This document shows, piece after piece, positions 13,663 through 59,210 of a stretch of DNA of 64,000 nt. Origin of the DNA: Hemiscyllium ocellatum (Eukaryota); contig NC_083416.1 in the NCBI RefSeq assembly GCF_020745735.1, positions 54,833,131 through 54,897,130 on the forward strand, written 5' to 3'. The notes below the pieces were generated by a model, which was not told the DNA's origin, did not search any database, and saw only the letters and a list, made by a program, of their open reading frames with translations. Both the position numbers and the translations under genes were made by a program. Every line of letters starts with the position of its first letter. Position 1 is the first letter of the stretch.

Positions 13663-13758
13663 AATCCTGATGAAGGGCTCTGGCCTGAAACGTCGAATTT
13701 CCTGTTGCTTGGATGCTGCCTAACCTGCTGTGCTTTAACCAGCAACAGATTTTCAGCT
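13663..13758 (+). mobile_element. PLE terminal fragment with hammerhead motif (13663-13698) in CYP2U1 intron 4
   Basis: aatc-CTGATGA-agggctctggcct-GAAA-cgtc-gaat. TSD gcctacaaatc at 13656-13666 and 13759-13769. Confidence 0.8.
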
Positions 13759-15020: not shown

Positions 15021-15188
15021 CTATTCCAAATGGCATAAATGCTTCATTTTTCACAATATTTCCATCTGCACTCAAGAAGCGAGAAGGATTAAATTCATCA
15101 GGATGTTCCCACATGCTTGGATCTCTATGCACAGACCACAGATTTGCAACCACCATGCTTCCTTTGGGTATAGTATAATCTTTAAAGT
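15021..15188 (-). CDS. CYP2U1: CYP2U1 coding exon 4 (168 nt; absent from the ORF track)
   Basis: ttttttctag|AC..ATAG|gtaggt. Translates as DFKDYTIPKGSMVVANLWSVHRDPSMWEHPDEFNPSRFLSADGNIVKNEAFMPFGI (PxRF meander). Confidence 0.96.
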
Positions 15189-16811: not shown

Positions 16812-16973
16812 CAACAGTTTCTGATGCCATATGTGGAATGGCAAGTGGGACCACCGTAGTCATGCGCTGAATTTCCATTATCGTTGCTTCTGTGAAAGGC
16901 ATATGAAGTTTGTCTTTGAGGGAAGGAGGTCTTGACTCGCCTATAACTGCGCTGATCTCTTTGTGAACTCTTT
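16812..16973 (-). CDS. CYP2U1: CYP2U1 coding exon 3 (162 nt)
   Basis: tttatag|AA..GTTG|gtaagg. Encodes [36 protein letters not shown] (K-helix ExxR). Confidence 0.97.
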
Positions 16974-17029
16974 CTATAAAAAGAGGAAATACATCTTTAC
17001 AGCCAGCTTGCATTGTAAGTTCTTTAACA

Positions 17030-17805
17030 GCTCCACTATGTTGACAAGGTGCCTTGAGGTAGTGAATGCATTGGTGGTCATCTTCCAAAGTTTTATTGAT
17101 TCTGAAATGATTTTTGCAGAATGGAAACTAGCAAATGCCACATCACTATTTAAGAAAGGAGTAAGAAAGAAACAGAACTGTTTCTTTGAGGATCTTACTA
17201 ACAAAATTGATAAAGGATTGTTGACGGACACAGTGTACTTGGAGTCTCAGAAGGCCCTCAGCAGGTTGATGAGCAAAATTGAAATTTCAGAGATAGGAAG
17301 TAATGTACTGGCATGGATTAAAGATTAACTAACAGACAGAAAACAGAATGGGGATACAACATGGGTTATTCTTGCATTGGCCTGTTCCTGGGATGGTACG
17401 ACTATCCTATAAAGAGACCTTGGGCCTGTCTTCTCCAGAGTTTAGAAGAATGAAAGGTGATCATATTGAAACCTACAATTTACTTAAAGTGATAAGCGAG
17501 ATAGTTCCACTGATTAGCGAGTCTAGAACCAAGGGGATAAAATTTAAAAATAAGGATTTGCCAGTTAGGATAAGGAGAATTCTTTTTTGTTCACAGGGTT
17601 GTGAATCTTTTGAAACTTTCTACCCCAGAGGGCTGGGTCTTTGTGAGTATATTTTGGTGCAAGTTGGTAAATTTTTGATTATGAATGACATAAAGGATTA
17701 TGGGAATCATACGTATATAGGACATTGAAGTGTTCAATCAGCCAGGATCATGCTAAATGGAGGATCAGGCTCGACAGGGTGAATGGCATACTCCTGTTCT
17801 TATAA
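17030..17805 (+). mobile_element. Internally deleted CR1 LINE beside the CYP2U1 exon 3 acceptor
   Basis: [24 protein letters not shown] and FRRMKGDHIETY, followed by a CR1 tail. Confidence 0.78.
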
Positions 17806-18526
17806 TACTTGGCTATACAGAGTGTGGAAGATGCTTTGTTTTCTGTTGCAGTTCGTATGAATGAGAATAGATTGACAGCAATAGTATAATTCATGATCTT
17901 GCCAGGGCAGAATGCCATGTTGATTTAAGAGTACATTCTAGAAAACTTCTGTAATTTTGACAACTAAAATAGCTTGACATCAACTCTGGACTTTAGATAA
18001 GGACAACAAAGATTGTTTCCCTTCATTTGGCGATTGTAGGAAAATTGAGGAAGTTACATTTGTTGTTTAAAAATGTAAGCTTCTGAAACTGTTCATATCA
18101 ATAAATGCAACATTGTTGGGTAAAATTGCTCAACAAATCACTGTAGTTCTGCTGTTATGCTGTGATGGCAGTTCTTTGTGGCTACTGCATCCAATAGTGG
18201 TCTGCTTCAGCATCTTCGACAGCAGGATTCCATCGGTCCAGTTACTGACGGCTTCAGGATAAGGTGGTTTCAGCCCAGCATCCAACAGTCTGGGACTCCT
18301 CTCAGCGACATCTACTGGCCCAGGATTAGCGATGAGGTGGGTCCTTGGAATAGATTCAGCATTCTGCGGAGTCTTGTAGCTCGGCATGGCAGCAGCCAAG
18401 CAAGGCAGCCTCTTTTGACGGCAATTTCGTTGCCTTTCAGCAGCAGTACTGTCTTTTCCTGAACCCAGGAGCCATGAATTGAACTAAAATGGACTTTCTC
18501 TTAAGTTTTTAAAAATGTTTTTTTAC

Positions 18527-18837
18527 ATTAGATTAGACTAGACTTACAGTGTGGAAACAGGCCCTTCGGCCCAACAAGTCCACACCGACCCGCCGAAGCG
18601 CAACCCACCCACACCCCTACATTTACCCCTTACCTAACACTATGGGCAATTTAGCTTGGCCAATTCACCTGACCCGCACATCTTTGTGACTGTGGGAGGA
18701 AACCGGAGCACCCGGAGGAAACCCACGCAGACACGGGGAGAACGTGCAAACTCCACACAGTCAGTCGCCTGAGTCGGAAATTGAACCCGGGTCTACAGGC
18801 GCTGTGAGGCAGCAGTGCTAACCACTGTGCCACCGTG
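18527..18837 (-). mobile_element. HE1-type V-SINE, CYP2U1 intron 2
   Basis: Near-identical reverse complement of 11497-11816. Confidence 0.9.
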
Positions 18838-19071
18838 TTTTCTTTTCTATGCCTTCTGTTATTAATAAAAGTACTGTGGTATGGTGACTTAAACACTTTT
18901 CGCTACATTTTCTTTGTACAAAATACAAGTGACAATAAATTACTATTTTATTCTATCCTATCCAAACACAAGTTTCCAAAGCTTGACAGCTCTCTCTGAT
19001 TTCTTATCAGTCTGCTTCTGAAAGATTGTCCTTCAAATATTTTAGTTAGAAAACTGGGCTTCACAAATCTT

Positions 19072-19198
19072 GGAGGAGAAAGTGAGGTCTGCAGATGCTG
19101 GAGATCAGAGCTGAAAATGTGTTGCTAGAAAAGCGCAGCAGGTCAGACAGCATCCTGCTGCCTCACCTGCTGCGCTTTTCCAGCAACACATTTTCAGC
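19072..19198. mobile_element. Short hairpin PLE insertion lacking the hammerhead, CYP2U1 intron 2
   Basis: Arms agctgaaaatgtgttgct..gcagcagg and cctgctgc..agcaacacattttcagct. TSD gcttcacaaRtcttg. Confidence 0.8.
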
Positions 19199-19998
19199 TT
19201 CACAAGTCTTGTACTTGATTTCTTAGACTGAGAAGACTTCTTGATCTAGGAACATGAGGCAAGTAGTTTGGTTTTACTTGACTGCTAGCCAGAAATCAGA
19301 GTCTATAGCTTGAGAGCTATTTGCAGGTTACTAGGTCAATTAACCTGTTTGACTATGCCATTTCTGTGGTCAAGTCCTAAATTGGGAATCAACCACATAG
19401 TTCTTGGCTCAAAAGAGGGATTACCCGCTGCACCCATAGACAAAAGAAATCCCTGTTTTATTTGGATGGAGGAAATTTGTTGCATTCTTTAGTTTAAGTG
19501 TACTGTTTAGGCGAGAGCTATATATTTCTCAAGCTTTCTTTTCATGGGTTAGGTAAATCTAAACTGGGATTCCTAGAATATCCCAAACATTTGTGTCCTT
19601 GAAAAACATAGTTTTATCCTTCTGGAGTTCCCCATCAATGGATGCTGGTGCCATTTTGGCACTTTTGAGTAAGCCAATAACAAATACTGAGCAGTTAGTC
19701 TTTGGTTTATTCTCTCACTGTTCCTGTCATGAAGAAATACCAAATTTCCATTTTAAGATCTCTGCTTCAGAGTTTGATGACGTGGTGTAGGGCAATTAGT
19801 GAAATGCATTGTAGCATCTTTGGACACTTCAATCCTTCAAACAGAATCATCATACTGGGGGAAAAAAAGTAGGGAAGTTTCTTATATTGAAATGCATTAC
19901 GTTATTACTAGCACGTAATATACAAGATCTTCTGACTCACAGTAATATTGATAAACCCTTTCCAAATGATCTCTCATATGTACAGATGAGTTAATTAC

Positions 19999-20634
19999 CT
20001 TGAATTTCTGGATGAACAGCCATAAACAGAATAGCCCACAACAGTGTGTTGGATGTCGTGTCTGTCCCTGCTACAAAGAGATCCCCAATTATGTAAAATA
20101 AATAATCTTCATTGAAGCTTGTATTTTGCTTTTTATGTCTATGATAGTCAATTTCTTTCAGATAAAAATCAACAAAATCACGTGGGTTTTCAGGGTCCAT
20201 AGTCTTTCGGTGCTGATCGATGATGTCTTTCAGGAACGCAGTTACATCTTTTACTGTTTGGGCAACCTCTTTGAAGGATCCCAAAGGTAAATACTGAAGT
20301 AAAGGAATTACATTGATGAGCATTGCTGAGCTGTTTGATGCTAATTTCATTCCTCGGACAATTAGATTCAGCATGGTTCTAAACTCTTCATCATCATAGT
20401 CAAACCGTTTCCCAAAGCACATTGAGCAAATGATGTTAGACACAGCGTTGTGAATGACATGAGAAGGAGAGAAGGCTGTCCCAATAGCATTGGAAAACTC
20501 TGACTTCACAAACTGCAGTTCCTCTATGATTTTTGGCTCCAGATCAAGTTTCCCAAAACCAAAGTGTCTCAGGGTCGAGAGGGAAAATTTTCTTTGTTGC
20601 TTCCAGACCAAGCCATATGGAGCAAAAACTATTC
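19999..20634 (-). CDS. CYP2U1: CYP2U1 coding exon 2 (636 nt)
   Basis: tttcag|GA..CAAG|gtaatt. Encodes GIVFAPYGLVWKQQRKFS (WxxxR) and the I-helix YLFYIIGDLFVAGTDTT, characteristic of CYP2U1. Confidence 0.97.
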
Positions 20635-22894
20635 CTGAAAATAATTATACAAGTACGTTATTACTCTGAACAGCATTTGCAATCTAAGTGATTACATTAC
20701 CCAAAATATTTTAAACCCAATACTTGTCTACTGCTCACTATCCCTGTGCCATTTCATATTGCTTTAAAACTTAGCGAGTTTTGAGAAGATTTGGGAAGAT
20801 TGCTTTCAAGCTGTTATTTAAAGAGAAAATAGGAAGAGATGTTTTGTGAAGAGGTTTTTCCTTAGAGACATTATGAATAAGATTATTGCCAGCAATTGGT
20901 AACTAATATTCAAGTGACACTTTACATTAAACCAGGGATGTCCTACCTGAAATGGTAAAACAGCTCTTCAAATGAGCACAAAAGCTGACTGAGTCCATTA
21001 AGAATGCTTGCATCACATCTTTATAATAATATCTCATTACATGATTTTACCATTGAATATAATTGCTTACCAGCAGAACTAGAGAAAACATTAACTAATA
21101 ATTTAGGAAGAGCCAATTCACAAGCTGGGAAGATAAATGATTTATAACCTTCCCAACACCATGAATCAAAAAGTGATTTCCATGACTATGCAATGCAACA
21201 GATTTTTCTGGTACACTTACAGCTTCAGATCCATTATAATTCCAGTAATGGGCAAAGATACTGAAAACTGAATAATTCATTATGACTTCCTCCTGGGGAC
21301 TCTCTGACCACAGAAGCTGGTCCTCAGCAAATTCAATTCCGTCCATGTAACACCACAAAGTGATGAGTGTACTAGATACAGCACAGGTCATTAGACCGAG
21401 CCACAGCTTGGATCTAATGTTGGAATATCTTTGCTTTAGAACTTGCTATGCCTCTTGCTAAGCTGTTCCATTGCATTTACACAAGCATTATCCAACAAAG
21501 TGCAAAACTGCCCAGCTATGTAATGTCTGGGGATGTAAATATCATTTAAAAGAAACGCCAATTTAAACTATGAAAATTATTTCTATTAACATTTTAAACA
21601 TTAGCAGGTTATATGCTAAAAATGAAAAATAGCACTGGATAAATTTGCTGGATAAATCAACAATTGTAGTACTGTTTCACATAATATCCTCAAGCATTGC
21701 TAACACCTTTAAAAAAATTCATTTCTCTGCGGCATTTTTGTGATCTATTTTAAATGTTAATTATAAAATATTAATGGCAAGATCAACACTTATCAATTAA
21801 CCATTTACTATTTTATATCCTTGGTTGTGTTCGCAAAAAGCACAATAAATCCAACCCAGCAAACTACCACCTTATCAATCTATAGTCAATCACTAGCCGA
21901 ACACATACCATAAACAAGATGCCTGCAGCAACTCGTTTTGGCACTTTTGACAGCACCTTTCAAAACCTTAAACTTCTGCCTTAGGAGAACAAAGGGGCAG
22001 ATACATTGGAACACCATCACCTGCAAGTTCCCTTCCAAACCGGACATCATTCTCACTGGGAACCATATCACCATCACTTTCCTGACATTGTGTCAAAGTT
22101 TGGAATTCCCTTTCTAACTGCATTGTGGGTATATTACATCAGATGGATTCAATGGTTTAAAAAGGTAGCTCACCAACACCTTCATGAAGGCAATTAGGAA
22201 CTATGACATCAATATCCTATTAAAGAGAATTACCAAGCAAAGTGATGGAAGGGATCATGCTAGTTGCATTTACTACCCTGTAGGATTCTCCAGAACCACT
22301 CATCTCCAAACCTCATTACAGCTTTGACTCAAACTTGAGTCCTGAATGCCAGACGTAACTGTGACTGCCCTTGAAATCAAAGTAGTATCTGCCCAAGTGT
22401 GGTATCAGAGTCTTTGGAAAATTGAGTACAATGGCAAATAGGGGGAAATTTCTCTTCCAGTTAGAATCATATTTAGTATTAAGTAACATGAAAAGAAGAT
22501 TCTTAAAGGAGGCCTACCAGCTCAGTCCCAGAATTCTCAGGACTCAGCATGTTGTTCCACTCCAGTTTTTCAGAAAGAAGCTGTCAGTGGCCATTAGCAT
22601 TAAGAGCTGGATAATATACAGGCTTAGGCAAATTAAATGGCAAATAAGATTCATGCCACACAAGAACCATGAAATGAATATCTCCAACAAGGATTGATTT
22701 TTTTATACATCTATAAGTGTTATCACCCAACGAATGGCTTTCCCAACACCAAATTTTTTGCATATTACTATTGACCATCATCAATAATCAACCATGCAGC
22801 CAATTAGAGGTTTACGTGCAAATCCCATTATGTGCAATGCAAATCATCAAAAATGAGCATGGGGGAAGCGGAGTGGTGGTGGTGGTTAGAGAGA

Positions 22895-23222
22895 GTGGGT
22901 GGAGAATAAATTAAAATGGGATTGGAGGGGGAGACAAAGCACTGCGGTCCCCACTGTACTCACCTCTCTAAGGCCATCGAAAACATTGGTGAACTCTGCA
23001 TGCTCCTTCTCCAATGACACCTGGGCATGTATGTAACTGCAGAAGAGGGGCAGACAATTGCCCCTCCAATATGATCCCCTCCATAGCTCACTCTGCCTGG
23101 ACCTGTTAATAGCTTGCCTGGTCAGGCCCAGCAGCAAACCCATGAGGAGGTCCTCTGATCTGCCTGCATTCCTCCACATCAGATGCCAAAGATCAGGAGC
23201 GTAGGGCTGAAGTGCAACAAAA
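22895..23222 (-). mobile_element. Tx1/L1-type LINE 3' fragment
   Basis: EDLLMGLLLGLTRQAINRSRQ..CLPLFCSYIHAQVSLEKEHA resembles the Tx1 ORF2 C-terminus. Confidence 0.55.
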
Positions 23223-23235
23223 AAAAATTCTCAAA

Positions 23236-25880
23236 TAGACAATAGGTGCAGGAGTAGGCCATTCTGCCCTTCAAGCCAGCATCACCATTCATTATGATCA
23301 TGGCTGATCATCCTCAATCAGTATCCTGTTCCTGCCTTATCCCCGTAACCCTTGATTCTCCTATCTTTAAGAGCTCTATCCAACTCTTTCTTGAAAGTAT
23401 CCAGAGACTTGGCCTCCACAGCCTTCTGGGACAGAGCATTTCATACACCCACCACTCTCTGGGTGAAGAAGTTTCTCCTCAACTCTGTTCTAAGTGGCCT
23501 ACGCCTTAATTTTAAACTGTGTCCTCTGGTTCGGGACTCACCCATCAGCAGAAACATGCTTCCTGCCTCCAGAGTGTCCAATCCTTTAATAATCTTATAC
23601 GTCACAAGCAGATCCCATCCTCAGCCTTCAAAACTCAAGTGTATACAAGCCCAGTCGCTTCAATCTTTCAGCTTAAGATAGCCCCACCATTCCAGGAACT
23701 GACCTCGTGAACCTACGCTGCTCTCCCTCAATAGCCAGAATGCCTTTCCTCAAATTTGGATGCCAACGGCACACAATATTCCAGGTGCGGTCTCACCAGG
23801 GTCCCGTACAGCTGCAGAAGGACCTCTTTGCTTCTATACTCAATTCCTCTTGTTATGAAGGCCAGCATGCTATTAGCTTTCTTCACTGCTTGCTGTACCT
23901 GCATGCTTGCTTTCACTGACTGATGTACAAGAACACCTAGATCCTGTTGTAGTGCCCCTTTACCTAATGTGACTCAATTTAGGTAGTAATCTGCCTTCCT
24001 GTTCTTGCCACCAAAGTGGATAACCACACATTTATCCACATTAAACTGCATCTGCTATGCATCCGTCCACTCACCTAGCCTGTCCAGGTCACCCTGTATT
24101 CTCCTAACATCCTCCTCACATTTCACCCTGCCACCCAGCTTTGTGTCATCAGCAAATTTACTAATATTACTTTTAATACCTTCATCTATATCATTAATGT
24201 ACATTGTAAAAAGCTGCGGTCCCAGCAGTGATCCCTGTGGCATACCACTGGTCACCGCCTGCCATTCCGAATGGGAGCCGTTTATCACTACTCTTTGTTT
24301 CCTGTCAGCCAACCAATTTTCAATCCATGTCAGTATTTTGCCCCTAATACCATGTGCCCTAATTTTGCTCACTAACCTCCTATATGGGACTTTATCAAAG
24401 GCTTTCTGAAAGTCCAGGTATACTACATCCACTGGATCTCCCTTGTCCATCTTCAGAGTTACATCCTCAAAAAATTCCAGAAGATTAGTTAAGTATGATT
24501 TCCCCTTCATAAATCCATGCTGACTCTGACCTATCCTGTTACTGCTATCCAGGTGTGTCATAATTTCGTCCTTTATAATTGACTCCAGCATTTTTCCCAC
24601 CACTGTGGTAAGACTAACTGGTCTATAATTCTCTGTTTTCTCTCTCCCTCCTTTCTTAAAAGGTGGGACAACATTAGCCACCCTCCAATCCGGAGGAACT
24701 GATCCTGAATCTATAGAACATTGGAATATGATTACCAATGCATCCACGATTTCTACAGTCATCTCCTTCAGTACTCTGGGATGCAGACCATTGGGTCCCA
24801 GGGATTTATCAACCTTCAGACCTAACAGTCTCTCCATCACCATTTCCTGCCTAATATAAATTCCCTTCAGTTCAGGTCCTTCAGCCACTATTACATCTGG
24901 GAGATTGCTCGTGTCTTCCCCAGTGAAGACAGATCTAAAGTACCAATTCAACTCTTCTGCCATTTCTTTGTTCCCCATAATAAATTCACCCGTTTCTGTC
25001 TTCAAGGGCCCAATTTTAGTCTTAACCATTTATTTTCTTTTCACATACCTAAAAACGCCTTTACTATCCTCCTTTATATTTTTGGCCAGTTCACCTTCGT
25101 ACCTTATTTTTTCTTTGCGTATTTCCTTTTTAGTTATCCTCTGTTGTTCTTTAAAAGCTTCCCAGTCCTCCAATTTCCCACTCATCTTTGCTATGTTATA
25201 CTTTTTCCCTTTTGTCTTTATATGGTCCTTAACTTCCCTCGTCAGCCATGGCCACTCCTGCCTCCCCTTAGGATTTTTCTTCCTTTTTGGAACGAACTGA
25301 TCCTGCATCTTCTGCATTATACCCAGAAATACCTGCCATTGTTGTTCCATTGCCGTTCCTGCTAGGGTATTGCACCATTGAACTTTGGCCAGCTCCTCCC
25401 TCATAGCTCCATAGTTCCCCTTATTCAATTGAAATATTGTCACTTCTGATTGTACCCTCTCCCTTTCAAACTGCAGATTATAGCTTATTGTATTGTGGTC
25501 ACTATCTTCTAATGGCTCCTTTACTTTGAGGTCCCTGATCAAATCCGGTTCGTTGCACAACACCAGATCCAGAATTGCTTTCTCCCTGGTAGGCTCCAGC
25601 ACAAGCTGTTCTAAGAATCCATCTTGGAGGCACTCCACAAACTCCCTTTCTTGGGGTCCAGTACCATCCTGATTCTCCCAGTCTACCTGCATGTTGAAAT
25701 CCCCCATAACAATTGTAGTAATATCTTTGCGACAGGCCAATTTTAGTTCCTTATTCAACTTACACACTACATCCAGGCTACTGTTTGGAGCTTGTAGATA
25801 ACTCCCATTAGGGTCTTTCTACCCTTAGAATTTCTCAGCTCTATCCATACTGACTCTACGTCCCCTGATTCTAGGTCCCT
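23236..25880 (-). mobile_element. CR1-clade LINE, long ORF2 (endonuclease C-part + RT) to the 3' tail, frameshifted
   Basis: ORFs 25030-25767 (MGDFN, ILDLV, SDHN), 24055-25029 (NYRPVSLT, QHGF, YLDFQKAFD, PQGSLLGP, FADD) and 23728-23916 (LVRPHLEYC). Confidence 0.93.
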
Positions 25881-26339
25881 TCTGGAGATAAGGAGACACC
25901 TCTTCAGCCAAAGAGTGAATCTATGGAATTCACTGCCACAGAAGGCTGTGAAGTTTAGGTCATTAAGTATATTTAAGACAGAGATAGATAGATTCTTCAT
26001 TGTCAAGGGGATCAAGGATTATAGGAAGAAAGCTAGAGAATGAAATTGAGAAACTTATCAGCCATGATTGAATGGCAGAGTAGACTTGATGGGCTGAATG
26101 GTCTAATTTCTATTCCTATGTCTTATGGGCTTTGAAACTTGAAGCCAGAAACTTCCAATTGTTCAGTGCATCGAACTAAAATGTGCACCTTAACTATGAA
26201 AACTAACTACTGAAGGAGCAGCACTCCGAAAGCTAGTGCTTCCAAATAAACCTGTTGGAATGTAACCTGGTGTTGTGTGATTTTTAATTGAAGGTCCCAA
26301 TGCTTGGCTTAAGACTATACTTAAAGAAACTATCAAACA

Positions 26340-28125
26340 GCATTGGCAGCAAGTGACAGAGGGAGCTAGGAGATCTCACAGATCAGATCTCAGCTCTGCA
26401 ATCCTGCCAAATCCACTTGTGAATGGTGGAGGACGATTAAACAACTCAATGGAAGAGGAGGCTGCAGAAATATCCCCATCCTCAGTGATAGAAGAGTCCA
26501 GCACATCAAGCTTTCACAGCAATCTTCAGCTAGAAGTGCCAAGTGGATGATGCATCTTGGCCTCCTCCACTGGTCCCCAGCATCACAGATACCAATCTTC
26601 AGCGAACTTGGCAACTTGGTAACAAGAAACTGCTGGAGACACTGGATACTGCAAAGGCTATGGGCTCTGAAAACACTCCAGCAATATTACTAAAGCCTTG
26701 AGCTTCAGAACTTGTTACTCCCCTAACCAACTGTTCCAGTAAAGTTATATCATTGGTATCTACCCGACAATGTTGATACTTAGACATCTATTTCCTGTAC
26801 ATAAAAAGCAGGACAAATCCAATCTGGCCAATTACTGCTCCAGCACTCTCGATCATCAGTTAAGAGGTGGAAGGTGTCATCAACACTGCTATCAAGCAGC
26901 ACTTGCTCAGCACTTACCTGCTCAGTTTTGGTTCTGTCAAGGCCACAGCTCCTGACCTTATTACAGCCTTGGTTCAAACATAGACAAAAGAGTTGAATTC
27001 CAGAGGTGAGGTGAGAGTGAGAGCCCTTGACATCAAGGTTGCATTCAACCAAGTGTAGCATCAAGGAGCCCCAGCAAAACTGAAATCAATGGATATCAGG
27101 GGCAAACTTTCTGGTCGTTCGAGTCATAAGTGACATTTAGGAAGACGGACGTGCTTGTTGGAGGTCAGTTATCTCAGCTCCAAGACATTGCAACAGGAAG
27201 TTCCTCAGGGTAGTGTCCTAGGCCCAACCATCTTCAGTTGCTTCATCAATGACCTTCCCACCAACATAAGGACAGGATGCAGACGTTTGCCAATTATTGC
27301 ACAATGTTCAGCACCATTCACGACTCCTCAGATACTAAAGCAGTCCTTGTTCACATGGAATGAGATCTGGACAATATCCAGGCTTGGGCTGACAAGTGAC
27401 AAGTAACATTAGCGCCACACACATGCCAGGCTATGACCATCACCAATAAGAGACAATCTAACCACCGCCACTTGACATTCAGTAGTGTTATGATCACTGA
27501 ACTCCCCACTATCAACATCCTGGAGATTATCATTACCAGAAGCTCAACTGAACTCGCCACATCAACACAGTGGCTACAAGAGCAAGTCAGAGGTGAGGAA
27601 TATTGCAATGTGTAACTCACCTCCTGACTCCTCAAAGATTGCCCAGCCTCCACAAGGCACAAGTCAGGGTGTGATGGAATACTTCACACTTGCCTAGAAG
27701 TGTGCAGCCCCAACAACACTCAAGAAGCTTGACACCATCCAGGACAAAGCAGCTACATCCAAAAGCATCCACTCCCTTCAGCACCGATGCTCAGTAGCAG
27801 CAGTGTGTACTAACTACAAGAAGCACTGCAGAAATTCACCAAAGCACCATGACCACTTCCATCTAGAAGGACATGGCAGAAGATATATGGGAACCTTCAA
27901 GATCCCCTCCAAGCCACTCACCATCCTGACTTGGAAATAAGTCACTGTTCCTTCATTGTCACCAGGTGAAAATCCTGGAATTTCCTTCTTCATGGCATTG
28001 TGCATCAACCCATACACGGACTACAGCGGGTCAAGAAGGCAGCTTACCACCACCTTCAAGGGCAACTAGGGACAGGCAATAAATACTGGCCAGCTAGTGA
28101 TACCCACAACACACAAATGAATAAA
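26340..28125 (+). mobile_element. CR1-clade LINE, second family (RT to 3' tail)
   Basis: PVHKKQDKSNLANY and VPQGSVLGPTIFSCFINDL. Tail ttcaagggcaactagggacaggcaataaatactggcc. Other copies at about 21870-22200, 35470-36350, 36850-37720, 39390-40520 and 57620-57900. Confidence 0.85.
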
Positions 28126-28285
28126 AAGAACTGGGCAAAGTATCAGTCAGGTTTTCAGGGTGTAAAGCAATGTTACAGACAATCCTGTAAAGGAACTGCT
28201 AGAGGCTGCCTACCTCTTTTATTCTTTTGTTGTGCAACAAGGAACAATTCATCCCAACTCTCCATTATACTCATATATATACCTC

Positions 28286-28550
28286 ATTCCTGATGAAGGG
28301 CTACAGCACGAAATGTCGATTTTCCTGCTCTTTGGACACTGCCTGACCTGCTGTGCTTTTCAAGCAACACACTCTCAACTCTGATGTCCAGTATCTGCAG
28401 ACCTCACTGTCTCCATATATACTACCAGCCTATATTCAAATATAGGCTGAAGAAGTCCTGAAGAAGGGCTTATGCCCGAAACGTCGAATCTCCTGTTCCT
28501 TGGATGCTGCCTGACCTGCTGCGCTTTTCCAGCAACACATTTTTAAGCTA
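28286..28550 (+). mobile_element. Two adjacent PLE terminal fragments, each with a hammerhead motif (28286-28321, 28454-28489)
   Basis: attc-CTGATGA-agggctacagcac-GAAA-tgtc and agtc-CTGAAGA-agggcttatgccc-GAAA-cgtc-gaat, each followed by the family tail ctgcctgacctgctg. Confidence 0.78.
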
Positions 28551-29064
28551 TATTCAAATTTATATTAAATGAAAGGTCACCAAGTTAAAACAAAAAGTTT
28601 ATTTTTCTCTCTATAGAAGTTGCCTGACCTACTTCCATCATTTTCTGCTTATGTTTCAACAGTTCCAACATTTACTGTGTACTATCTATAGAAATATAGT
28701 CCTGAATATAAAGTACAGGTCTTCTGCTCTCTGTCATAATGCTCTGTGCAACATCTATTAATGAATACAGAAAGGCTGTTATGCTCAAACAATAGATGAC
28801 AACTCCAACTATGCAGCACCCTCATAATACTGCCGAAATTGTCAAACAAAATTACATTATCAAGTTCCATGCTGGCTATCCAAGTACTTCTTGGATTTAG
28901 CAGGAATCTCAATCTGCTGAAGGAAATAGACTTTTTGTTAGGATTGCAAATTAGAACATAGTTTATGAATTAATACTTCATTGTGTAGCACAGTCTATTT
29001 AAGATGTACCACTACAGGACAAAACAACTCTACAATCAACACAATATTACACTATTTCAAACAC

Positions 29065-31520
29065 TTAAGACCATAAGAGCTAGGAGCATAATTAGGCCAT
29101 TCAGCCTGCTGAATATGCTGTGCCATTTGATCATTGCTGAAACATTTCTTAATCCCATCCTCCTGCCTTCTACTTGTCATCCTTGATCTCCTTACAAATC
29201 AAGAACCTTTCTATCTCTCTATTAAAGACAATTTATGTCTTGGCCTCCATAGCCCTCTGTGGCAATGAGTTTCACAGATGCGCCACCCTCTGCCTGAAGA
29301 CATTTCTCCTCATCTCAGTTCTGAAGGGTCATTCTTCACTCTGAGGTTATGCCCTCTGGTCCTAGCCTCTACTAGTGGAAACATCTCCACTTCTACTCTA
29401 TCCAGGCTTTTCAGTATTCCACAAGTTCCAATGAGATTCCACCTCCCCCACCAGTTATCCTCCTACACTCTCCTGAGTACGTATGCAGACTCCTCAACCA
29501 CTTCTCATATGAAAAGCTCTTCCTCCCCAGGATCATTCCTGTCAATTCCCTGAGGACCTCTTCCCTGGCCACACATCCTTGGGTAGATTTGGGGCACAAA
29601 ACTGTTCACAATATTCCAAAAACCTCAGCAATATATTCTTGCTCTTGCATTCTAGCCCTCTTAAAGTGAATGCTAACATTGTGTTTGCCTTCCTAACTGC
29701 TAACTTTAAGTGAATTCTGAAGTAGGACTATGTCTATTTAGTGCTTCAAATTTCTGAAGCCTTTCCCCGTTTAGAAAATACTGTACACTTCTATTTTTCC
29801 TACCAGCACAACCTCACACTTTCTCATATTGTATTCCATCGGCCTGTCCAAGTCCTTCTGCAGCCTCGACACTATGTTCCCTTCACCTATCTTTGTGTCA
29901 TCTACAAACTAAACAGCAATGCCATCAATTCCTTTGTCCAAATTGTTAACGTATAACTTGAATATTTGAGGTCCCAAATCTGACCCCTGCAGATGTCCAC
30001 TTAATCACTAGTTGCCATTCAGAAACAGACTCCTTTAACCCCAATCTCTGCCTTCTGCCAGTCAGCCAATCCTCTCCCCATGCCAGTACCTTGCCCTTAA
30101 CACTATGTGCTCTTATAAGAGCTATAAGCCTATGTAGCACCTTGTCAAAGGTCTTCTGGAAATCCAAACAGATCACTCCCCTGGCTCTACCTTTTCTAAC
30201 TTATTCAAAGAATTACCTCCTCAAAGAATTTGAACAGATTTGTCAGCAATGACCTCCCCTTGATGAAGCCAAGTTGACTCTGTCCTATTTTACCATGTGC
30301 TTCCAAGTGCTCCACAATCTCATCTTTAATAATGGACTTTAAAATCTTACCACCGATTGAAGTTGGACTAACCAGACTATAATTTCTCACCTCTGCTCCC
30401 TTCCTTCTTAAACAGGGTTGTTATATTAGTCATCTTCCAATCGGATGGGACCCTCCGTGCCTCCAGTCATTCCTGAAAGATCACCACCAATGCCTCCACA
30501 ATCTCCTCAGCTTCTTCAGAGCCCTAGGATGTAGCCATAGAGATGTATATCATGGAAACAGATCCTTTGGTCTAACCTGATATCCTAAATTAATCTAATC
30601 GCATTTGCCAGCAGTTGGCCCATATCTCTCCAAACGTTTGCTATTCATATACTCATCAAGGTGCCTTTTAAATGTTCTAATTGTACCAGCCTCCATCACT
30701 TCCTCTGACAGCTTATTCCATACACGCATCACCCACTATGTGAAAACATTGCCCCTTAGATGCCTCTTAAATCTTTCCTCTCTCACCCTAAATCTATGTC
30801 CTCCAGTTCTGGAAATAATTTGTCTATTTACCTATCCATGCCCCTTATGATTTTATAAACATCCAAAGAGTCACTCCTCAGCTCTGACATGCCTCAGAAA
30901 GCAGCCTCAGCCTATCCAGCCTCTCACTATAGCTCAAACACTCCAACCTTGGCCCATCCAGTCCAGGTGATTTATCCGCCTTCAGCTTCCCCAGCACCTT
31001 CTCCTTAATGATAGCCACTACTCTCCTCTCTGCCCTCCCAACTCTCTCAAAATTCTGGTATGCTACTGGTGTCTTCCTTTGTGAAGACTGATGCAAAACA
31101 TCTTTTCAGTTCCTCTGTCATTTCTTTGCTCCCCACTGCGACCTCCACCCTCATTTTTCAGAGTCCACTCTGGCCTCTCTCTTTTACCTTTATATATCAA
31201 AACAAACTTTTGCAGTCTTCTTATATTACTAGCTAGCTTACCCAATATTTTTTCAACACCCACTACCGCTGCCCCTGCCCCCGTTGCTCTCTGCTGGTAA
31301 AATGCTTCCCAATCCTCTGGCTTCCCACTGCTCTTTACTACATTGTACTCATCAGCCTTGGTTGCCTCATCCTCCCCTTAGTACATTTCTTCTTCCTTGG
31401 GATGACTTTCTGCTGTACTTCTCGAATTACTCCCAGTCACTCCTGCTGCTCCACTATTCTATATTTTTCCCTGCTCCCCTTCCAATCTGCCAGCTTCTCC
31501 CTCATCTTTGCAGTTACCTT
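29065..31520 (-). mobile_element. Degraded CR1 LINE with a nested CR1 3' end (about 30535-30950)
   Basis: CLDFQKTFDKV, KILKSIIKDEI..SQLGF and KSPGLDG peptides. Confidence 0.8.
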
Positions 31521-32843
31521 ACTCAATCGTATCACACCTTTGCACCATCTCTATATCTTCACCCTCTCCCAAATGTTCATTTTATTTAAGTTACAACACA
31601 GGGAAATAAGGCACCTTGTACTCTTTTACCGAACCATGGAAAGAGAGTTAGCCTTTACAGAAGCCATGCTCAGCAATCAGGCTAAGCAGTAACAAGACTT
31701 GTGACTGCTGTGTCTATGTATGAAGCAATAGTTCCAGATATGACTAAAATCTGCCCCCACAGTACTCTCTTCAAACGATTATTACATCAAGTCATTACAG
31801 AATTTAATTTCACAAGAAATTGATTCTAATCTGCTCTGTAAATTACCCTGTGATTTTATACAATGCTACTTTTTCAATTTTGATTTTTCAGGAAACCACC
31901 AATAGTTTTGCAGCAGGTGGTGGTTGAGGGCAAATGCTTTCCTCTTCAGGTTTGTAAGGACGCTAATGGAATTTTTTTTCTTTCTCTACACTTTAGGATT
32001 TTTGGTTATAGGAAGGGGCCTTTTCTATGCTTTTTTACCTTATGTTGTCTCTTCATCTCCAAGTTTCACTGTTCTATGCTATCTAGTTAAAGTGTATAGT
32101 AGTTCATGCTCCAATTATTTGATGATCATTTCAGAATTGGCAGGTAGCTGTGGAATTCTACACTTCTAGAATTTCTATTTTCATTTCAGACTTCTTGTGT
32201 GATACAAATAGAGGTGCATGAATGCCACTAAGTTTTACATCTTTCCAATTACTGCCTTTCCTAGTTAGGAAGTCCTTGACATTTCACTGAGTACCAGCCT
32301 ATGATTGCAAAGTCAAAATAAAAATCTCACCTTGCAGAGAAGATGATCAAGTCTTACAACATGCCAATGAATATTTCTCATTCAGTTTCCTTCATTGTTT
32401 TTAACTCATTTTGAATTTCTCTCGTGCTTCACTTTCTTACTTTAAGATTTCCTTAAGAGCTAATAATCAAAACGCATGCAGTATAAAAATAATTGCATAA
32501 TTATCTGGGGAGATCCTATTCAGTTGGCAATGAAGATGTCAATTCATAAAACATTAATCTATTATCTGTATTTTGTAATGATATAATAAAACTTTTAAAA
32601 TTACATGGCTATGGGGTGAAATTTTCAATTTTTTTGGAAACTTAACTATACAGAAAGTAAAATCATGCAGATTTAAAAATGCCATTGTTCATCAAATGTA
32701 ACTTTGTTAACAAGTCATTAGAGGAAAATGGACCATTGTCTGTTTCATCAAATTTCAGCTCTTTAGATCATGCCCATTGAAAAATATTTTGTAAGATTTC
32801 ATTGTATTTACTTTATTCACAGGTGATATGAGGTGTTCAATAT

Positions 32844-33123
32844 AGGGCGGCACAGTGGTTAACACTGCTGCCTCACAGCACCAGAGAACTGGGTTCAATT
32901 CCCATCTCAGGCAACTGTCTGTGTGGAGTTTGTACATTCTCTCTGTGTGGGTTTCCTCCAGGTGCTCTGGTTTCCTCTCTCAGTCCAAGAATGTGCAGGT
33001 TAGGTGAATTGGCCATGCTAAAATTGCCTGTAGTGTTAGGGGAATGGGTGGGTTGCCCTTCAGAGGGTCAGTGTGGACTTGTTGGGCTGAAGGCCTGCTT
33101 CCACACTGTAAGTAATCTAATCT
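32844..33123 (+). mobile_element. HE1-type V-SINE (older), CYP2U1 intron 1
   Basis: Same head, V-domain and taatctaatct tail, with CpG decay and deletions. Confidence 0.85.
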
Positions 33124-34052
33124 CCACATCATGTGTGTACTTTGACAGGTACTCAATTTTCATGCATTTCTGTTCAGCAATTTCAGATTACTTTCAATGT
33201 CACTGTGTATTTTTCATAGCTGAAGTTGTAAATAATTCTGCCATTAACAGCTCCTTCATATCCATCTTTTGTTTCTTTACTTATCACATAGCATGATCTT
33301 TACTCTGCACCATCATTCACATATCAGTTAGTCTCCATCTTTGCCTTTTTGATCCTTCTGCATTGTTCTTTTCTTTGTCCCTCACTCCTTTTCCTGTCTC
33401 ATCACAGCTTGTTTTTTCCTGTTCTGAAAAATGGACTTTACTTTTCTCTCAACTAATGCTCCAGGTTTTATTTAAACTTATTTCCAGGTTTTCTGCACAT
33501 AATGCACATTTTAATATTTAATCAATAAGAGCTCCCACTCCTGTTAACTCGCTGCTCTCCCACCATAACCAACGGTCCTGTCTATCTCCTCAAATAGGAG
33601 TTCCTTGGTTGCGCTCTCAGTCATGTAAGTCTCATCATCATGGTTTGGGCTGGTCAGACCATTGTAATTGCATCTGGTTAGCTAATAGTGATGCCAATAG
33701 TGTGGGTTCAATTTGCTCACCAGCTGAGGTTGCCATGAAGGCCTCAATTTCTCAACCTCTTCCCTTGCCTGAGGGATGGTGGTCTTCAGGTTAAATCACC
33801 ACCAGACATCTCTTTCTAATGACAGGGCAGCCCTACAGTCAGGTAAGACTACAGCAACTTGCATCACATCAAATTTCCTTGTGGGTAAGTTTTTTTTCCA
33901 AACTCATTTTTTTAAAATTGCAGATATATTGAATTCAAATATCATTGCGGATGGGAACTCATATTCCTAGATCCAAATCTCTGGAATCACTAGTCCAGTG
34001 ACATTACTACAATGCCACCATCTGCCCAATCGATGCCCTCTGTATCTCTAAC

Positions 34053-34527
34053 CTTTACGCTTGGTTATGATGGTGATTAGAGGGATGGTGGGTCTATCGG
34101 AGAAGACCTCGGCGTTATGCTGCAGTGCATCTCTGACCATTTGGAAGCCATTGAGGATTATCATGAGCCGTCTGCCCAGGTACAGTCTGCAAATTTCTCC
34201 ATAGGTCTTGCCGAGGGCGGTGAGGTACAGATGCGGTGGGAGCTGGCTCCGGGAGCCCTGTCTCCGAGCCAAAGAGAGCAGCAAGCCGATCAGCGGCCAG
34301 CAGGTTGGTCCAGGAGGGAGCTTGCACCGCTGCCGGACCCTGCGCTTCAGGAGGTACCGGCTCAGCAAGAGAACAGCAAGCCCCAGGAGGACAGGCGTCA
34401 TGTACTGACCGGCCGCGGGGATCTGGCCGAGTCCCGGACACTGACCGGCCCCGGGGGTCTGGCCGAGTCCCGGACACTGACCGGCCGCGGGAGAATTAAC
34501 AGCTTCATGACGCGGACCCGCCGCCAT
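34053..34527 (-). CDS. CYP2U1: Cytochrome P450 2U1, coding exon 1 (475 nt)
   Basis: ATG at 34527 in a strong Kozak context (AAAATGG). Encodes MAAGPRHE..., a hydrophobic anchor VLLGLAVLLL, basic KRRVRQR, hinge LPPGPTCWPLIG and FSDRP. Ends AAAG|gttag (phase 1). CpG-rich. Confidence 0.93.
34404..34492. repeat. 36-bp coding tandem repeat (about 2.5 units) in CYP2U1 exon 1
   Basis: Units actgaccggccgcggggatctggccgagtcccggac start at 34404, 34440 and 34476 (partial). Encodes PAAGQCPGLGQT-PGAGQCPGLGQI-PAAGQ. Confidence 0.92.
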
Positions 34528-48360: not shown

Positions 48361-48482
48361 TCAGCATGCAGGGAAAGGCCACATTTATAATTGAGGGACA
48401 ACTACCTGTACCTTTACTAAAACAGAAGATTTGAAACCACCATATATGGGATATGATTATGTGGGGAAACTGACTGAAGAAT
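48361..48482 (-). pseudogene. Decayed terminal exon of a sphingomyelin synthase (probable SGMS2 relic)
   Basis: T-tract plus cag|ATT acceptor. Reads ILQSVSPHNH / SHIWWFQIFCF / KVQVVVPQL*MWPFP across two frameshifts and a TAA. Compare the SGMS terminal exon as recalled: SRAWWFPIFYFFEKNVQG (SGMS2) and VQGIVPRSYHWPFP (SGMS1). Confidence 0.7.
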
Positions 48483-49369
48483 CTGTTCACAAAAAAAAAT
48501 GCATTCAAAGGATTATTTATTTTGAAAAAAGGAACTCTGTCAAACCTATAACTTATTCATAACTACCAACTGTTCAAAACCCAAATGGTTCAGCTGAAAA
48601 CTGTAATCAAGACCAGCTGATTAGAACAATTAAGGTCACATAGGGACTATTTTCTGTTATTGATGGTATTTTTTGGCAACAGAACATCTGCTGCTGAGTC
48701 CAAAGGTTGACCACAATGTAGAGGGAATGTAGAGTTCTGGTGGCAGTCTATAGATACCAGTAGATGAGCCACAGGTGTGAAAAGGAGCCAACTACAGCCA
48801 AAATCCATCCTGTAGTTGGGGTTTCCTTTCCTGCTGTTGCTTCTAACAATTGAGGTTTTCTTTCAATTTTAAATTTTGAGCAGGATTCCAAGAATGCTTC
48901 CATTTTCATGCACTCTTACAACTGCCTTTCTGCCTAAACAGTGCAAGGACTCTCTAGAGTCTGTCCAATAGGCCCTTTCATTGGGCTTCCCAAATTAGGG
49001 ATCAGACATGGTTGTGTTGGAGCCTACCCTCATGTTAAATTGCAACGAGCAGATGCCTTGACGACAAGTTTGAGAAAATTCAAATGTGAACAAATTGAAG
49101 TCAATTCAATAGCTGAAGTAATTGAAGCAGTTCCACTTTGATGAGCTTGGTAGAGGTTTCACGCTTGTTTATGACTGCAATTAATCACTAAACAATCATT
49201 TGACAGCTCATGCTGTGATTGACTGAATGATCTGCCAAACATACATAAAAGTAGGAAGGCAGTATGAATAGGGGAACAAAGTTAGTAATGAGTTACATTA
49301 TAAAACCTTTTAAGCATTTGACTTTGCAACATGTTATTAAAACAATAGCCAGGTTATAACTGTGATAGC

Positions 49370-49640
49370 TGTGATTCAGCTGAGCCAATTACAGTTTCAT
49401 TTTTGAATCAGAGAATTGAGTTCAAAGCCCAGTTCAGAGATTTAAAAACAAAAGATGAGTTTGACACTCCAATACAGTATTGGTGGAATATTATACCATT
49501 GGAGGAGTAACCTTTAGGATCTTCTGTTAGTCTGTCTGTCTGGCCTATCAGATGAACATAAAAGACTATATGACACTAGTTGAATGACTTGCTGGGAACT
49601 TCACCCCAATATCCTGGCCAATGTTATACTTTTATAATCA
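49370..49640 (+). mobile_element. Old DeuSINE/AmnSINE-like element
   Basis: tgacactccaatacagtattggtggaat..ttggaggagtaaccttt..taaaagactatatgacact..tcctggccaa resembles the Deu domain as recalled. Highly diverged. Confidence 0.4.
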
Positions 49641-51232
49641 TGTTAACAAATTCAAATTTGTGAACACTAATTGGGAGGCATAGTTAATGTAAAGGAAAAC
49701 CATAGCAACATACAATAAGACACTGATAAAGCTTCAGAATATTCATGTAGTGGCAAATAACTTGCAATGTAGAAAACAGTGCAGTGATGCATTTTCGTAC
49801 GAATAATGAGCTGTTTGTTGGCGGGAAGGCAATTGATAAATTAGCAAGACGTGCTTTCCAATGCCCTCCTGCCCACCCCAAGCTATTGTTAGTCTTAGAG
49901 GCAGAGGATGAGGCTTAAGGAATGGGGAGAGGACGCCCAACAGGTAATCTGCTCAAACTTTAGGTGGAAACTGTGGACATATCCCTCAAAGACCCTCTTT
50001 CATATCTTCCCCTCTACCAACCCACAACAGTTGTTATTTCCCCCTCAGCCTCTCCACCACGATCCCTAAAGATCCTTTCCCCACCCCTCAGAAACTCACC
50101 TTCACTCCCTGACATGAGAACCCTCCCTCCCCAGCCATTCAGCAACACCTACCTAGTCCTGTTGTAGTAGATCTCTGAGATTAAACTTCTGCACTCTCCC
50201 CAAAACAGAGGCAGAAGCCTCACATGCTCCATGAAGCATTAAATGGCTATGGGACAGTAGTTTCAGAGACAATTTGAAAACTCCATTACCCATTAAACAC
50301 AGACCAAGAATTCTGAGGGGTGACCCCATAGAGGACTTTAAGATTTCACGAGGGTTTTCTGAGGGGAAGATGTAGAAAATTGTTTCCACTTGTCAAAGTG
50401 TCCAAAACCAGAAGACCCAACCATACCAAAACCATAAATAGCTGCTAAAAATCGAAGAGGCAATTTGAAAGAAGTTTCTTTACCTGAAGAGAAGAAGGAA
50501 TGTAGAATGCACAACCAGATGGGATATTTGAGGCAAATAGCATAAATGCATTTTGAAAGCAGCCAGATGAGGAAGAAAGGATTAGCAGGATGTTCCGATG
50601 GATTTGGTAACACAGGGTTGATGGAGGTGTGTTTGAGTAACATGTAAAGGTGGTTATGATTATGAAAGTTGCACATATGATGTTCTTTGGTTCTGTGTAT
50701 CTTCAAAACAGCTTGTATGGTATTCCTGGAAAAATGTCAGCCTCTATGAGCAGTCAGTCAGAGGTGATCAGGGTAAAAAGTTAATAAGAACTTCTGTGGC
50801 ATCAGACTGTACGCTAAGAATCCGTTCTGCATTGAACGTTATCATAGGAGAAGTAACTTAGTTTTGCCATTTGAGGATAACTAAATTTATAGTTTGTAAT
50901 TACCAAAACTATGTACTTTCTTTTATCTGATTAATACTAAATAAATCTGTCTGTGAATTTATAGTCTGGACCACAGTCTAATGAGTGAAAATCCATCCAC
51001 CTATCAAGGTTAATAATTACAGGGATGTAAGAACTGGTTACTGAATGGCCAGCTATATGGAACTCAATGAGACCTTTTAACATTAAAACTCAGAGGAACT
51101 GGAGAAAATTGTAGTCTTCCCAATTTGGAAAGTAATCCGTTAAAGTATATCATCCACTCATTCGAAATCATGTGGAAGTAAGTAAGAAGGAGAACTGAGA
51201 AAGCAAACCAATTAATTAGTTACTTAGTTTAC

Positions 51233-51295
51233 TTGATGATTGACCCAGGTATGATGTCATCATAAGAGTCCTGTTGTAAAGAAATACACCAGCAC
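51233..51295 (-). pseudogene. Decayed 3' part of the penultimate sphingomyelin synthase exon
   Basis: Reads VLVYFFTTGLL**HHTWVNHQ|gtaaac, against SGMS VVAYYITTRLFWWYHTMANQQ. Both Trp codons are TGA (51257-51262). The phase-0 donor falls at the expected boundary. Confidence 0.7.
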
Positions 51296-51597
51296 ATATC
51301 AGAACTCCATTCTAACATGGTCCATTGCCTATGTATCTTAAGGCTGCATTATGGGAAGACCATTGTTGTTGCAATGTCTGTTCAAAATTGCCAAGTGATA
51401 GGACAGAATCATGTAGAACTACAGATATATCAGTGAAAATGATCTTATAGAGAAAAACCATCTGACCTGTGGTTAACAAACAAATTGAAACAATCAATTT
51501 GTCGCTTCTACTGAATAATTGTATACATAACTCAACAGATTATCAGCAATGAATAAATGGATGTGTTGGAAAATGGTCAATTTTAACCAGTTGTAGT

Positions 51598-51968
51598 TGT
51601 ATTCTTTCATGGGATGTAGGTGTAACCAGGCATTTGTTGCCCATCCCTAATTGTCCTTGCACTGAGCAGCTTGTTAGGCCATTTCAGAGGGTAGTTAAAA
51701 ATCAATGACATTGCTATGAGCCTGTCATCCTAAGTAGGCCATACCCAAGTAGGGTGGAAGATTTCATTCCCTAAAATATATTAGTGAACCAGCTGGAGTT
51801 TTTACAACAATTAATAACCTCATGGTTATCATTACCTTCAGGCGAGTTTTTAATTCCAATTTTAAATAACTGAATTCCACTAGTTGCCAGGATGGAATTT
51901 GAACTGATGTCCCAAAACAATTAACTTGGGCTTTTGAATTACAAGTCCAGTGACACTACCACTCCCCC
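51598..51968 (-). mobile_element. tRNA-headed SINE sharing head and tail with the second CR1 family
   Basis: Same ctggttcactaat..agggaa..tctgaaatggcctaacaagc core as 45100-45390, and the LINE tail aattagggatgggcaacaaatgc. A second copy lies at about 42510-42845. Confidence 0.7.
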
Positions 51969-52139
51969 AGTTAACCAATTTTGCCAAATCTTTCTCTTTG
52001 CTAATTGTAGGACATGCTGCCATTGTGTCCCACTTGCAGTAATTGATTTTACTTAGGCTTCCAGCCATCTCAAGGATTCTCCCATGTAGTGTGTTACTGT
52101 ATGGATGATCACAGTGTTGGTGCCATTGACATCATCTTC

Positions 52140-59170: not shown

Positions 59171-59210
59171 GCAGACATTTCGTCCCCTGTCTAGGTGACA
59201 TCCTCAGTGC
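59171..59210 (-). ncRNA. Minimal hammerhead ribozyme in the inverted Penelope terminus
   Basis: Minus strand GCA-CTGAGGA-t-GTCACCT-agac-AGGGGAC-GAAA-TG-TC-TGC. Core intact, GUC triplet. Confidence 0.72.

What the first reader, a model, noticed from the sequence alone, without database searches (positions are those of the whole stretch)
48361..52095. Probable SGMS2 (sphingomyelin synthase 2) pseudogene at its syntenic position upstream of CYP2U1
Seen in sequence: two minus-strand relic exons in the right order and splice phase, neither recognisable as such from the ORF track. 51233-51295 reads VLVYFFTTGLL**HHTWVNHQ|gt, with both Trp codons changed to TGA. 48361-48482 reads ag|ILQSVSPHNH/SHIWWFQIFCF/KVQVVVPQL*MWPFP, with two frameshifts and a stop. 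A weaker third relic at about 51990-52095 (RILEMAGSLS..., then tactgcaagtgggacacaatgg resembling the YSGHT catalytic motif, then SKE) lies further upstream. Established: human has SGMS2 directly upstream of CYP2U1 on the same strand, and SGMS2 variants cause bone fragility and mineralisation disorders. Inference: this is an old unitary gene loss or a dead tandem duplicate. Loss of a bone-mineralisation-linked enzyme in a cartilaginous fish would be notable.
Basis: partly seen in the sequence, partly recalled or inferred. Interest (0 to 1): 0.85.

Follow-up and report, generated by a model that had tools for sequence, protein, structure and literature searches.

The report
Decayed sphingomyelin synthase exons beside CYP2U1
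Upstream of an intact CYP2U1 gene in this shark sequence lie the broken remains of the last two coding exons of a sphingomyelin synthase gene, exactly where bony vertebrates keep SGMS2, but whether the shark has lost SGMS2 altogether could not be settled from this window.

Summary
They are the 3' end of a sphingomyelin synthase (SGMS) gene.

- **Last exon (48370-48482, minus).** It scores 70 against a mammalian SGMS1 last exon in a frameshift-aware alignment. The next best place in the window scores 44, giving about 4.5e-4 expected per window.
- **Penultimate exon (51233-51295, minus).** Its last 21 codons end on a GT. Against five family members that GT scores 31-44; the best of the other 6,806 GT sites scores 14-22.
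- **Intron.** The 2.75-kb gap sits at the family's last intron position in phase 0, so this is not a processed copy.
- **Lesions.** TGA-TGA replaces Trp-Trp, and the last exon has two frameshifts and one stop. The catalytic part of the penultimate exon is gone.
- **Third relic (about 52 kb).** Not supported.
- **Exons 1-4.** No trace in the window.

The window matches Hemiscyllium ocellatum CYP2U1. In a bird, SGMS2, CYP2U1 and HADH lie on one strand, so the position argues for SGMS2. The sequence itself cannot separate SGMS1 from SGMS2 (AU p about 0.5 each). I could not distinguish a unitary loss from a dead partial duplicate below an intact gene.

The parts
51233..51295 (-). Relic of the 3' 21 codons of the penultimate coding exon of an SGMS gene. 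It corresponds to ...VVAYYITTRLFWWYHTMANQQ of SGMS1. TGA TGA at 51262-51257 stands in place of the Trp-Trp pair.
   Evidence: Translation. In the donor-anchored ungapped test it ranks 1 of 6,807 GT sites for five family queries. Traceback alignment.
51231..51232 (-). GT donor (gtaaac) directly after the last codon of the penultimate-exon relic, phase 0.
   Evidence: The teleost SGMS2 gene has its last intron at the same position and phase (...ANTH|gt ... ag|ALRQ, L004).
48483..51230 (-). Former last intron of the gene, about 2.75 kb. It ends with a T9 tract and cag.
   Evidence: The presence of this intron excludes a processed (retrocopied) pseudogene.
48370..48482 (-). Relic of the last coding exon. 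It corresponds to VLKEASQMNLLARVWWYRPFQYFERNVQGIVPRSYHWPFP of SGMS1. It has two frameshifts (near 48452 and 48416) and an in-frame TAA at 48387-48385.
   Evidence: Frameshift-aware score 70 against a next best of 44, E about 4.5e-4 per window. For most of the family C-terminal segments tested it is the best place in the window on either strand. It matches no other sequence in the window or in L001-L003.
48361..48369 (-). Two codons and a TGA after WPFP. The reading ends here, well short of the normal C-terminal tail.
51296..51400 (-). Place where the 5' 34 codons of the penultimate exon should lie, including the catalytic H-Y-T-x-D motif. Nothing is recognisable and a TGA lies two codons before the relic.
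   Evidence: acceptor-anchored test at background. The exon is 55 codons long in the teleost gene.
51990..52095 (-). It is not supported as an SGMS exon.
   Evidence: No SGMS hit in the PDB. Alignment scores of 25-32 are background. The neighbouring stretch 51597-51955 is a dispersed repeat.
12885..34527 (-). Intact CYP2U1 with five coding exons, at about 34527-34051, 20635-20000, 16974-16816, 15186-15016 and 13064-12885. It is the downstream neighbour that defines the synteny.
   Evidence: tblastn. Zero mismatches to Hemiscyllium ocellatum CYP2U1, P0349.

Best explanation
This is the decayed 3' end of a multi-exon sphingomyelin synthase gene, lying 13.8 kb upstream of CYP2U1 on the same strand in an epaulette-shark (Hemiscyllium) genome. 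Only the last coding exon and the last 21 codons of the penultimate exon can still be read. They are separated by the original phase-0 intron.

The sequence cannot encode an enzyme. It carries three stops and two frameshifts, and the stretch that should hold the catalytic His/Asp motif is gone.

The most likely history is this. The locus is what remains of the shark's SGMS2 orthologue. It lost function long ago and has drifted neutrally, while transposable elements filled the surrounding DNA.

Shown: family identity, gene structure, lesions and position. Inferred: orthology to SGMS2 (from position only), and that no intact copy exists.
For: - **Last exon.** Score 70 against a background of at most 44-49 over the window and six other loci.
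- **Penultimate exon.** Rank 1 of 6,807 GT sites by a wide margin with SGMS1, two teleost SGMS2 and two invertebrate queries.
- **Arrangement.** The two relics lie on one strand in the right order 2.75 kb apart. Their GT and AG fall at the family's last intron position in phase 0.
- **PDB.** Human SMSr is the top hit of 177,635 PDB sequences and is collinear over both relics.
- **Synteny.** A bird locus has SGMS2 (PAP2_C, 365 aa), then 9 kb, then CYP2U1, then HADH, all on one strand.
- **Age.** The relic's end branch is 1.72 changes per site against a median of 0.32, as expected for long neutral decay.
- **Uniqueness.** The relic exons have no other copy in the window or in L001-L003, so they are not part of a repeat.
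Against: - The readable codons do not group with SGMS2. AU tests accept SGMS1 or SGMS2 equally (p 0.52 and 0.50), and the flanks of the last exon score better with SGMS1.
- Exons 1-4 were not found in the 12.7 kb upstream that the window holds. The gene's 5' part is therefore either beyond the window or erased.
- Nothing shows that the genome lacks an intact SGMS2 further upstream.
- HADH is not in the window, so synteny rests on CYP2U1 alone.
- Shared lesions in other sharks could not be examined. The 10-kb flanks obtainable for Rhincodon, Stegostoma, Heptranchias, Amblyraja and Pristis do not reach the relic's position or show nothing.
Confidence: 0.6

Rival explanations
1. This is a dead partial tandem duplicate. 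An intact SGMS2 lies further upstream, beyond 64 kb, and these two exons are a duplicated 3' end that never functioned or was made redundant.
For: Only 3' exons are seen, and no trace of exons 1-4 lies in the 12.7 kb upstream. Duplication of this gene block may occur elsewhere: the gecko Paroedura has extra SGMS2-like and CYP2U1-like genes, though I did not check that they are linked. Nothing in the window excludes an intact copy upstream.
Against: Shark introns are long, so missing upstream exons are expected in either case. The relic sits at a distance from CYP2U1 (13.8 kb) that is proportionate to the bird's 9 kb, as the true last exon would. No second copy of the exons is seen in the window.
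Confidence: 0.27
2. This is a relic of an SGMS1-derived copy (a segmental duplicate of SGMS1) that happened to land upstream of CYP2U1.
For: Mammalian SGMS1 gives the best scores for both relics. The relic has WPFP and VQVVVP; mammalian SGMS1 has WPFP and catshark SGMS1 has VQVIVP.
Against: Invertebrate members also carry WPFP or WP(L/F)PWP, so these are probably ancestral states. The core WWFQIFCF is closer to the SGMS2 motif WWFPIFYF. The SGMS1 clade (support 92/85) does not contain the relic in the free tree. Landing by chance at exactly the SGMS2 position and on its strand is unlikely.
Confidence: 0.06
3. This is a chance resemblance in non-coding DNA.
For: Plain tblastn gives only E 4.8 for the best ungapped piece. 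Pfam finds nothing. The PDB hit has E 0.43 on a read-through whose frames were chosen with SGMS in mind.
Against: Two independent tests that use the window itself as the null place both relics first by wide margins. They also lie on the right strand, in the right order and with the right splice phase, next to the right neighbour.
Confidence: 0.03
4. This is a functional gene misread because of assembly or sequencing errors, or because of recoding.
For: Lesions in a single assembly are unverified.
Against: There are five separate lesions in 63 codons. The catalytic H-Y-T-x-D stretch is lost. The terminal branch is very long at the amino-acid level. No Sec or frameshift signal was looked for, and none is expected at Trp codons.
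Confidence: 0.01

Closest known systems
SGMS2 (sphingomyelin synthase 2, phosphatidylcholine:ceramide cholinephosphotransferase 2) of bony vertebrates
   Same: The relic sits directly upstream of CYP2U1 on the same strand, as bird SGMS2 does. The last intron position and phase match. The core WWF-IF-F and LS- resemble the tetrapod SGMS2 motif WWFPIFYFF.
   Different: The relic is not an open gene. It lacks the Cys-rich C-terminal tail. The start and end of the last exon look more like SGMS1 or the ancestral state. Clade membership is unresolved.
SGMS1 (sphingomyelin synthase 1)
   Same: It gives the highest alignment scores for both relics, and it shares HT-.N.Q at the exon end and WPFP. As an old paralogue (from my own knowledge) it has the same exon structure.
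   Different: From my own knowledge, SGMS1 lies at another locus in vertebrates. The free tree places the relic outside the SGMS1 clade, which includes the catshark sequence.
Unitary pseudogenes in general
   Same: It is a decayed, intron-bearing relic at the ancestral position, with stops and frameshifts and an intact neighbour gene.
   Different: The defining point, that no functional copy remains in the genome, was not testable here.

Membership tests
Sphingomyelin synthase family (PAP2_C, PF14360) | Sequence similarity to family members beyond chance | tested here: met
   ranked first in the window by wide margins; SMSr is the top PDB hit. It holds for the C-terminal 59 codons only.
Sphingomyelin synthase family (PAP2_C, PF14360) | Catalytic motifs: S-G-H-T and H-Y-T-x-D (the His/His/Asp triad) | tested here: not met
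   No Pfam hit. No relic of the exon with SGHT. The H-Y-T-x-D part of the penultimate exon is unrecognisable. The locus descends from the family but is not an enzyme gene.
Sphingomyelin synthase family (PAP2_C, PF14360) | Conserved position and phase of the last intron | tested here: met
   The relic reads ...NHQ|gt...cag|ILQ. The croaker SGMS2 gene reads ...NTH|gt...cag|ALR, both phase 0.
SGMS2 orthologue | Lies upstream of CYP2U1 on the same strand | tested here: met
   The bird locus L001 has SGMS2, CYP2U1 and HADH in that order. In the window the relic is 13.8 kb upstream of CYP2U1 exon 1.
SGMS2 orthologue | Groups with SGMS2 rather than SGMS1 in a tree | tested here: inconclusive
   Weak basal placement (75/0). 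AU p is 0.52 with SGMS1 and 0.50 with SGMS2.
Unitary pseudogene (true gene loss) | Disabling lesions | tested here: met
   Three stops, two frameshifts and a missing exon part.
Unitary pseudogene (true gene loss) | No intact copy elsewhere in the genome | not testable with these tools
   Only the 64-kb window is available. Earlier notes on this genome hold nothing on SGMS, CYP2U1 or PAPSS1.
Unitary pseudogene (true gene loss) | Lesions shared with related species, which would date the loss | tested here: inconclusive
   No gene is called within 10 kb upstream of CYP2U1 in eight chondrichthyan assemblies (seven species): Chiloscyllium punctatum and C. plagiosum, Cetorhinus, Rhincodon, Stegostoma, Heptranchias, Amblyraja and Pristis. 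In the five species with DNA no SGMS-like exon is found, and in Rhincodon the flank demonstrably stops short of the relic's position.
Processed pseudogene | Lacks introns | tested here: not met
   A 2.75-kb intron with GT...AG lies at the ancestral position.

The most novel reading that the evidence does not exclude
This locus would then be its only remaining trace, and sharks would make sphingomyelin with SGMS1 alone.
Probability: 0.4. Interest if true: 0.65.

Novelty: new member of a known kind. Interest (0 to 1): 0.45.

Why it matters
If the relic is all that remains of SGMS2, sharks would be vertebrates that naturally lack this enzyme. It supplies plasma-membrane sphingomyelin and has been tied to bone mineralisation in humans. 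That would give a natural knockout for asking what SGMS2 adds beyond SGMS1. It would also add a candidate to the list of skeleton-related genes missing in cartilaginous fishes. I found no paper that treats SGMS2 in cartilaginous fishes. If an intact copy lies upstream, this is an ordinary dead duplicate.

Tried and rejected
- **Pfam.** A scan of the read-through and of the ORFs found nothing.
- **Plain tblastn.** The bird SGMS2 last exon put the relic only fifth in the window. A lenient frameshift-aware alignment gave it only a narrow lead, 61 against 59. Stricter penalties and other family members were needed.
- **Third relic.** No support.
- **Exons 1-4.** Whole-protein and splice-anchored scans stayed at background. 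Recurrent weak peaks near 56.8 kb were low-quality alignments.
- **Relatives' loci.** I tried to reach the orthologous relic, or an intact SGMS2, through CYP2U1 loci of relatives. For Chiloscyllium punctatum, C. plagiosum and Cetorhinus no DNA was available. For Rhincodon, Stegostoma, Heptranchias, Amblyraja and Pristis, 10 kb upstream shows no called gene and no SGMS-like exon. In Rhincodon the flank reaches only to about window 38.3 kb.
- **Logan contig L008.** This 923-bp contig carries an SGMS2 last exon 83% identical to the bird's. It comes from an unknown organism and does not align to the window.
- **HADH.** Not found in window 1-12.9 kb.
- **Tree and AU tests.** They could not assign the paralogue.
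- **Earlier scan notes.** Nothing relevant.

Full report
**What is in the sequence**

On the minus strand, 51295-51233 translates to VLVYFFTTGLL**HHTWVNHQ and is followed at once by gtaaac. The two stops are TGA TGA.

At 48482 an exon-like stretch begins after a T9 tract and cag. It reads ILQSVSPHNH, then in a second frame SHIWWFQIFCF, then in a third frame KVQVVVPQL, a TAA, and MWPFP.

**The neighbourhood**

The window carries an intact five-exon CYP2U1 on the minus strand between 34527 and 12885. Its exons have no mismatch to Hemiscyllium ocellatum CYP2U1 and are 93% identical to Chiloscyllium. The window is therefore from an epaulette shark or a very close relative.

The relic's last exon lies 13.8 kb upstream of CYP2U1 on the same strand.

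To check the claimed synteny I fetched a bird CYP2U1 locus (Tympanuchus, L001). A 365-aa gene with the PAP2_C domain ends 9 kb upstream of CYP2U1, and a 3-hydroxyacyl-CoA dehydrogenase gene follows, all on one strand. Its last exon reads TLKVSSQTNFLSRAWWYPIFYFFEKNVQGSVPCSFSWPISWPP....

**Is the resemblance more than chance?**

The first signals were weak.
- Pfam found nothing.
- Plain tblastn ranked the best ungapped piece fifth in the window.
Its E-value was only 0.43, and the frames had been chosen with SGMS in mind.

I therefore collected family members with a search seeded by the bird exon and named them through their clusters. I then wrote a frameshift-aware local aligner, using the window itself and other shark loci as the null.
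- **Last exon.** With the last exon of mammalian SGMS1, the relic at 48370 scores 70 and the next best 1-kb block on either strand scores 44. Adding the skate and sevengill loci, a Gumbel fit gives P 3.5e-6 per block, or 4.5e-4 expected per window.
- **Wider null.** In loci of whale shark, zebra shark and sawfish, taken whole, that query reaches at most 49.
- **Other family members.** For most family C-terminal segments tested, vertebrate and invertebrate, the relic is the best place in the window on either strand.
- **Penultimate exon.** It is not significant in a free local alignment (44, about two expected per window). It is striking in a test that asks for an ungapped match of the exon's last 21 residues directly before a GT. 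Among 6,807 GT sites on both strands, the one at 51232 scores 44, 40, 39, 36 and 31 for five family members, and the runners-up score 14-22. For SGMS1 the mean is -23 with SD 9.5.

**Gene structure**

In the croaker SGMS2 gene (L004) the last intron falls after ...YHTMANTH and before ALRQ..., in phase 0. The penultimate exon there is 55 codons long.

The relic has its GT after ...HHTWVNHQ and its AG before ILQS..., at the same position and phase. The copy is therefore intron-bearing and not a retrocopy.

Only the last 21 of the 55 penultimate-exon codons survive. A TGA lies two codons before them. The part that should hold the catalytic H-Y-T-x-D motif cannot be found in any frame.

**What is not there**

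The stretch beside it, 51597-51955, is a dispersed repeat with copies elsewhere in the window and in the sevengill shark.

Scans for exons 1-4 found nothing above background up to 64 kb, both with whole proteins and with splice-anchored tests. Either those exons lie beyond the window or they have been erased.

**Which paralogue?**

The readable codons are a mosaic.
- The core WWFQIFCF and the preceding Ser look like the tetrapod SGMS2 motif WWFPIFYFF.
- The exon ends (HT..N.Q, VLKE-like start, WPFP) look like SGMS1, and also like invertebrate members, so they are probably ancestral states.

In a maximum-likelihood tree the relic has a very long end branch (1.72 against a median of 0.32). It sits weakly (75/0) at the base of the SGMS2 side and outside the SGMS1 clade. 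AU tests accept either SGMS1 or SGMS2 membership, with p 0.52 and 0.50. The SGMS2 label therefore rests on position.

**Loss or duplicate?**

I could not see beyond the window.
- No gene is called within 10 kb upstream of CYP2U1 in eight chondrichthyan assemblies.
- Where DNA was available, no SGMS-like exon lies in that flank.
- In the whale shark the flank ends at the equivalent of window position 38.3 kb, short of the relic.
- The library search found no paper that treats SGMS2 in cartilaginous fishes.
- Earlier notes on this genome are silent.

**Verdict**

An SGMS-family pseudogene fragment is firmly present. My estimates are about 0.6 that it is the remnant of the shark's SGMS2 orthologue, about 0.27 that it is a dead partial duplicate below an intact gene, and the rest for an SGMS1-derived copy, chance or error. 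The biological claim that would make this notable, loss of SGMS2 in sharks, is untested.

Noticed in passing
window 59191-61211 (+), with a partial second copy at 59191-59442 (-): These ORFs look to me like a Penelope-like retroelement. A reverse-transcriptase-like ORF (60136-60852...YVDDTF...) is followed by an ORF with a motif resembling a GIY-YIG endonuclease (60810-61211...KHYIGQTRRQL...). The tail is repeated nearby. This was recognised by eye in the ORF list and was not searched.
   Followed up: no
window 24055-25767 (-); 46060-47011 (-); 52851-53219 (-); 11128-11505 (-); 40983-41357 (-); 54282-54587 (+): There are many fragments of LINE-type reverse-transcriptase ORFs. The conserved tail ...LEYCVQFWSP...LERVQRRFTRM... 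recurs. They fill the CYP2U1 introns and the space between CYP2U1 and the relic, which may explain the long intergenic distance.
   Followed up: no
window about 34380-34500 (-), CYP2U1 exon 1: The N-terminus of the shark CYP2U1, before the membrane anchor, holds a short tandem duplication (AGQCPGLGQTPG AGQCPGLGQIPA). The salamander protein lacks it.
   Followed up: no
P0274 / P0315 (Paroedura picta) and P0114 / P0120 / P0146: The gecko Paroedura picta has a divergent extra SGMS2-like gene. Its catalytic stretch reads HAYNLVD instead of H-(Y/F)-(S/T)-x-D. The species also has extra CYP2U1-like genes, which hints at a duplicated SGMS2-CYP2U1 block in that lineage.
   Followed up: no
L004 / L005 (Larimichthys crocea): The croaker gene annotated SGMS2 (P0262, 2 kb long) is not next to CYP2U1. 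Its called neighbour, about 3 kb away on the opposite strand, is a TIG/IQ-domain gene. At least this teleost copy has left the ancestral neighbourhood.
   Followed up: partly
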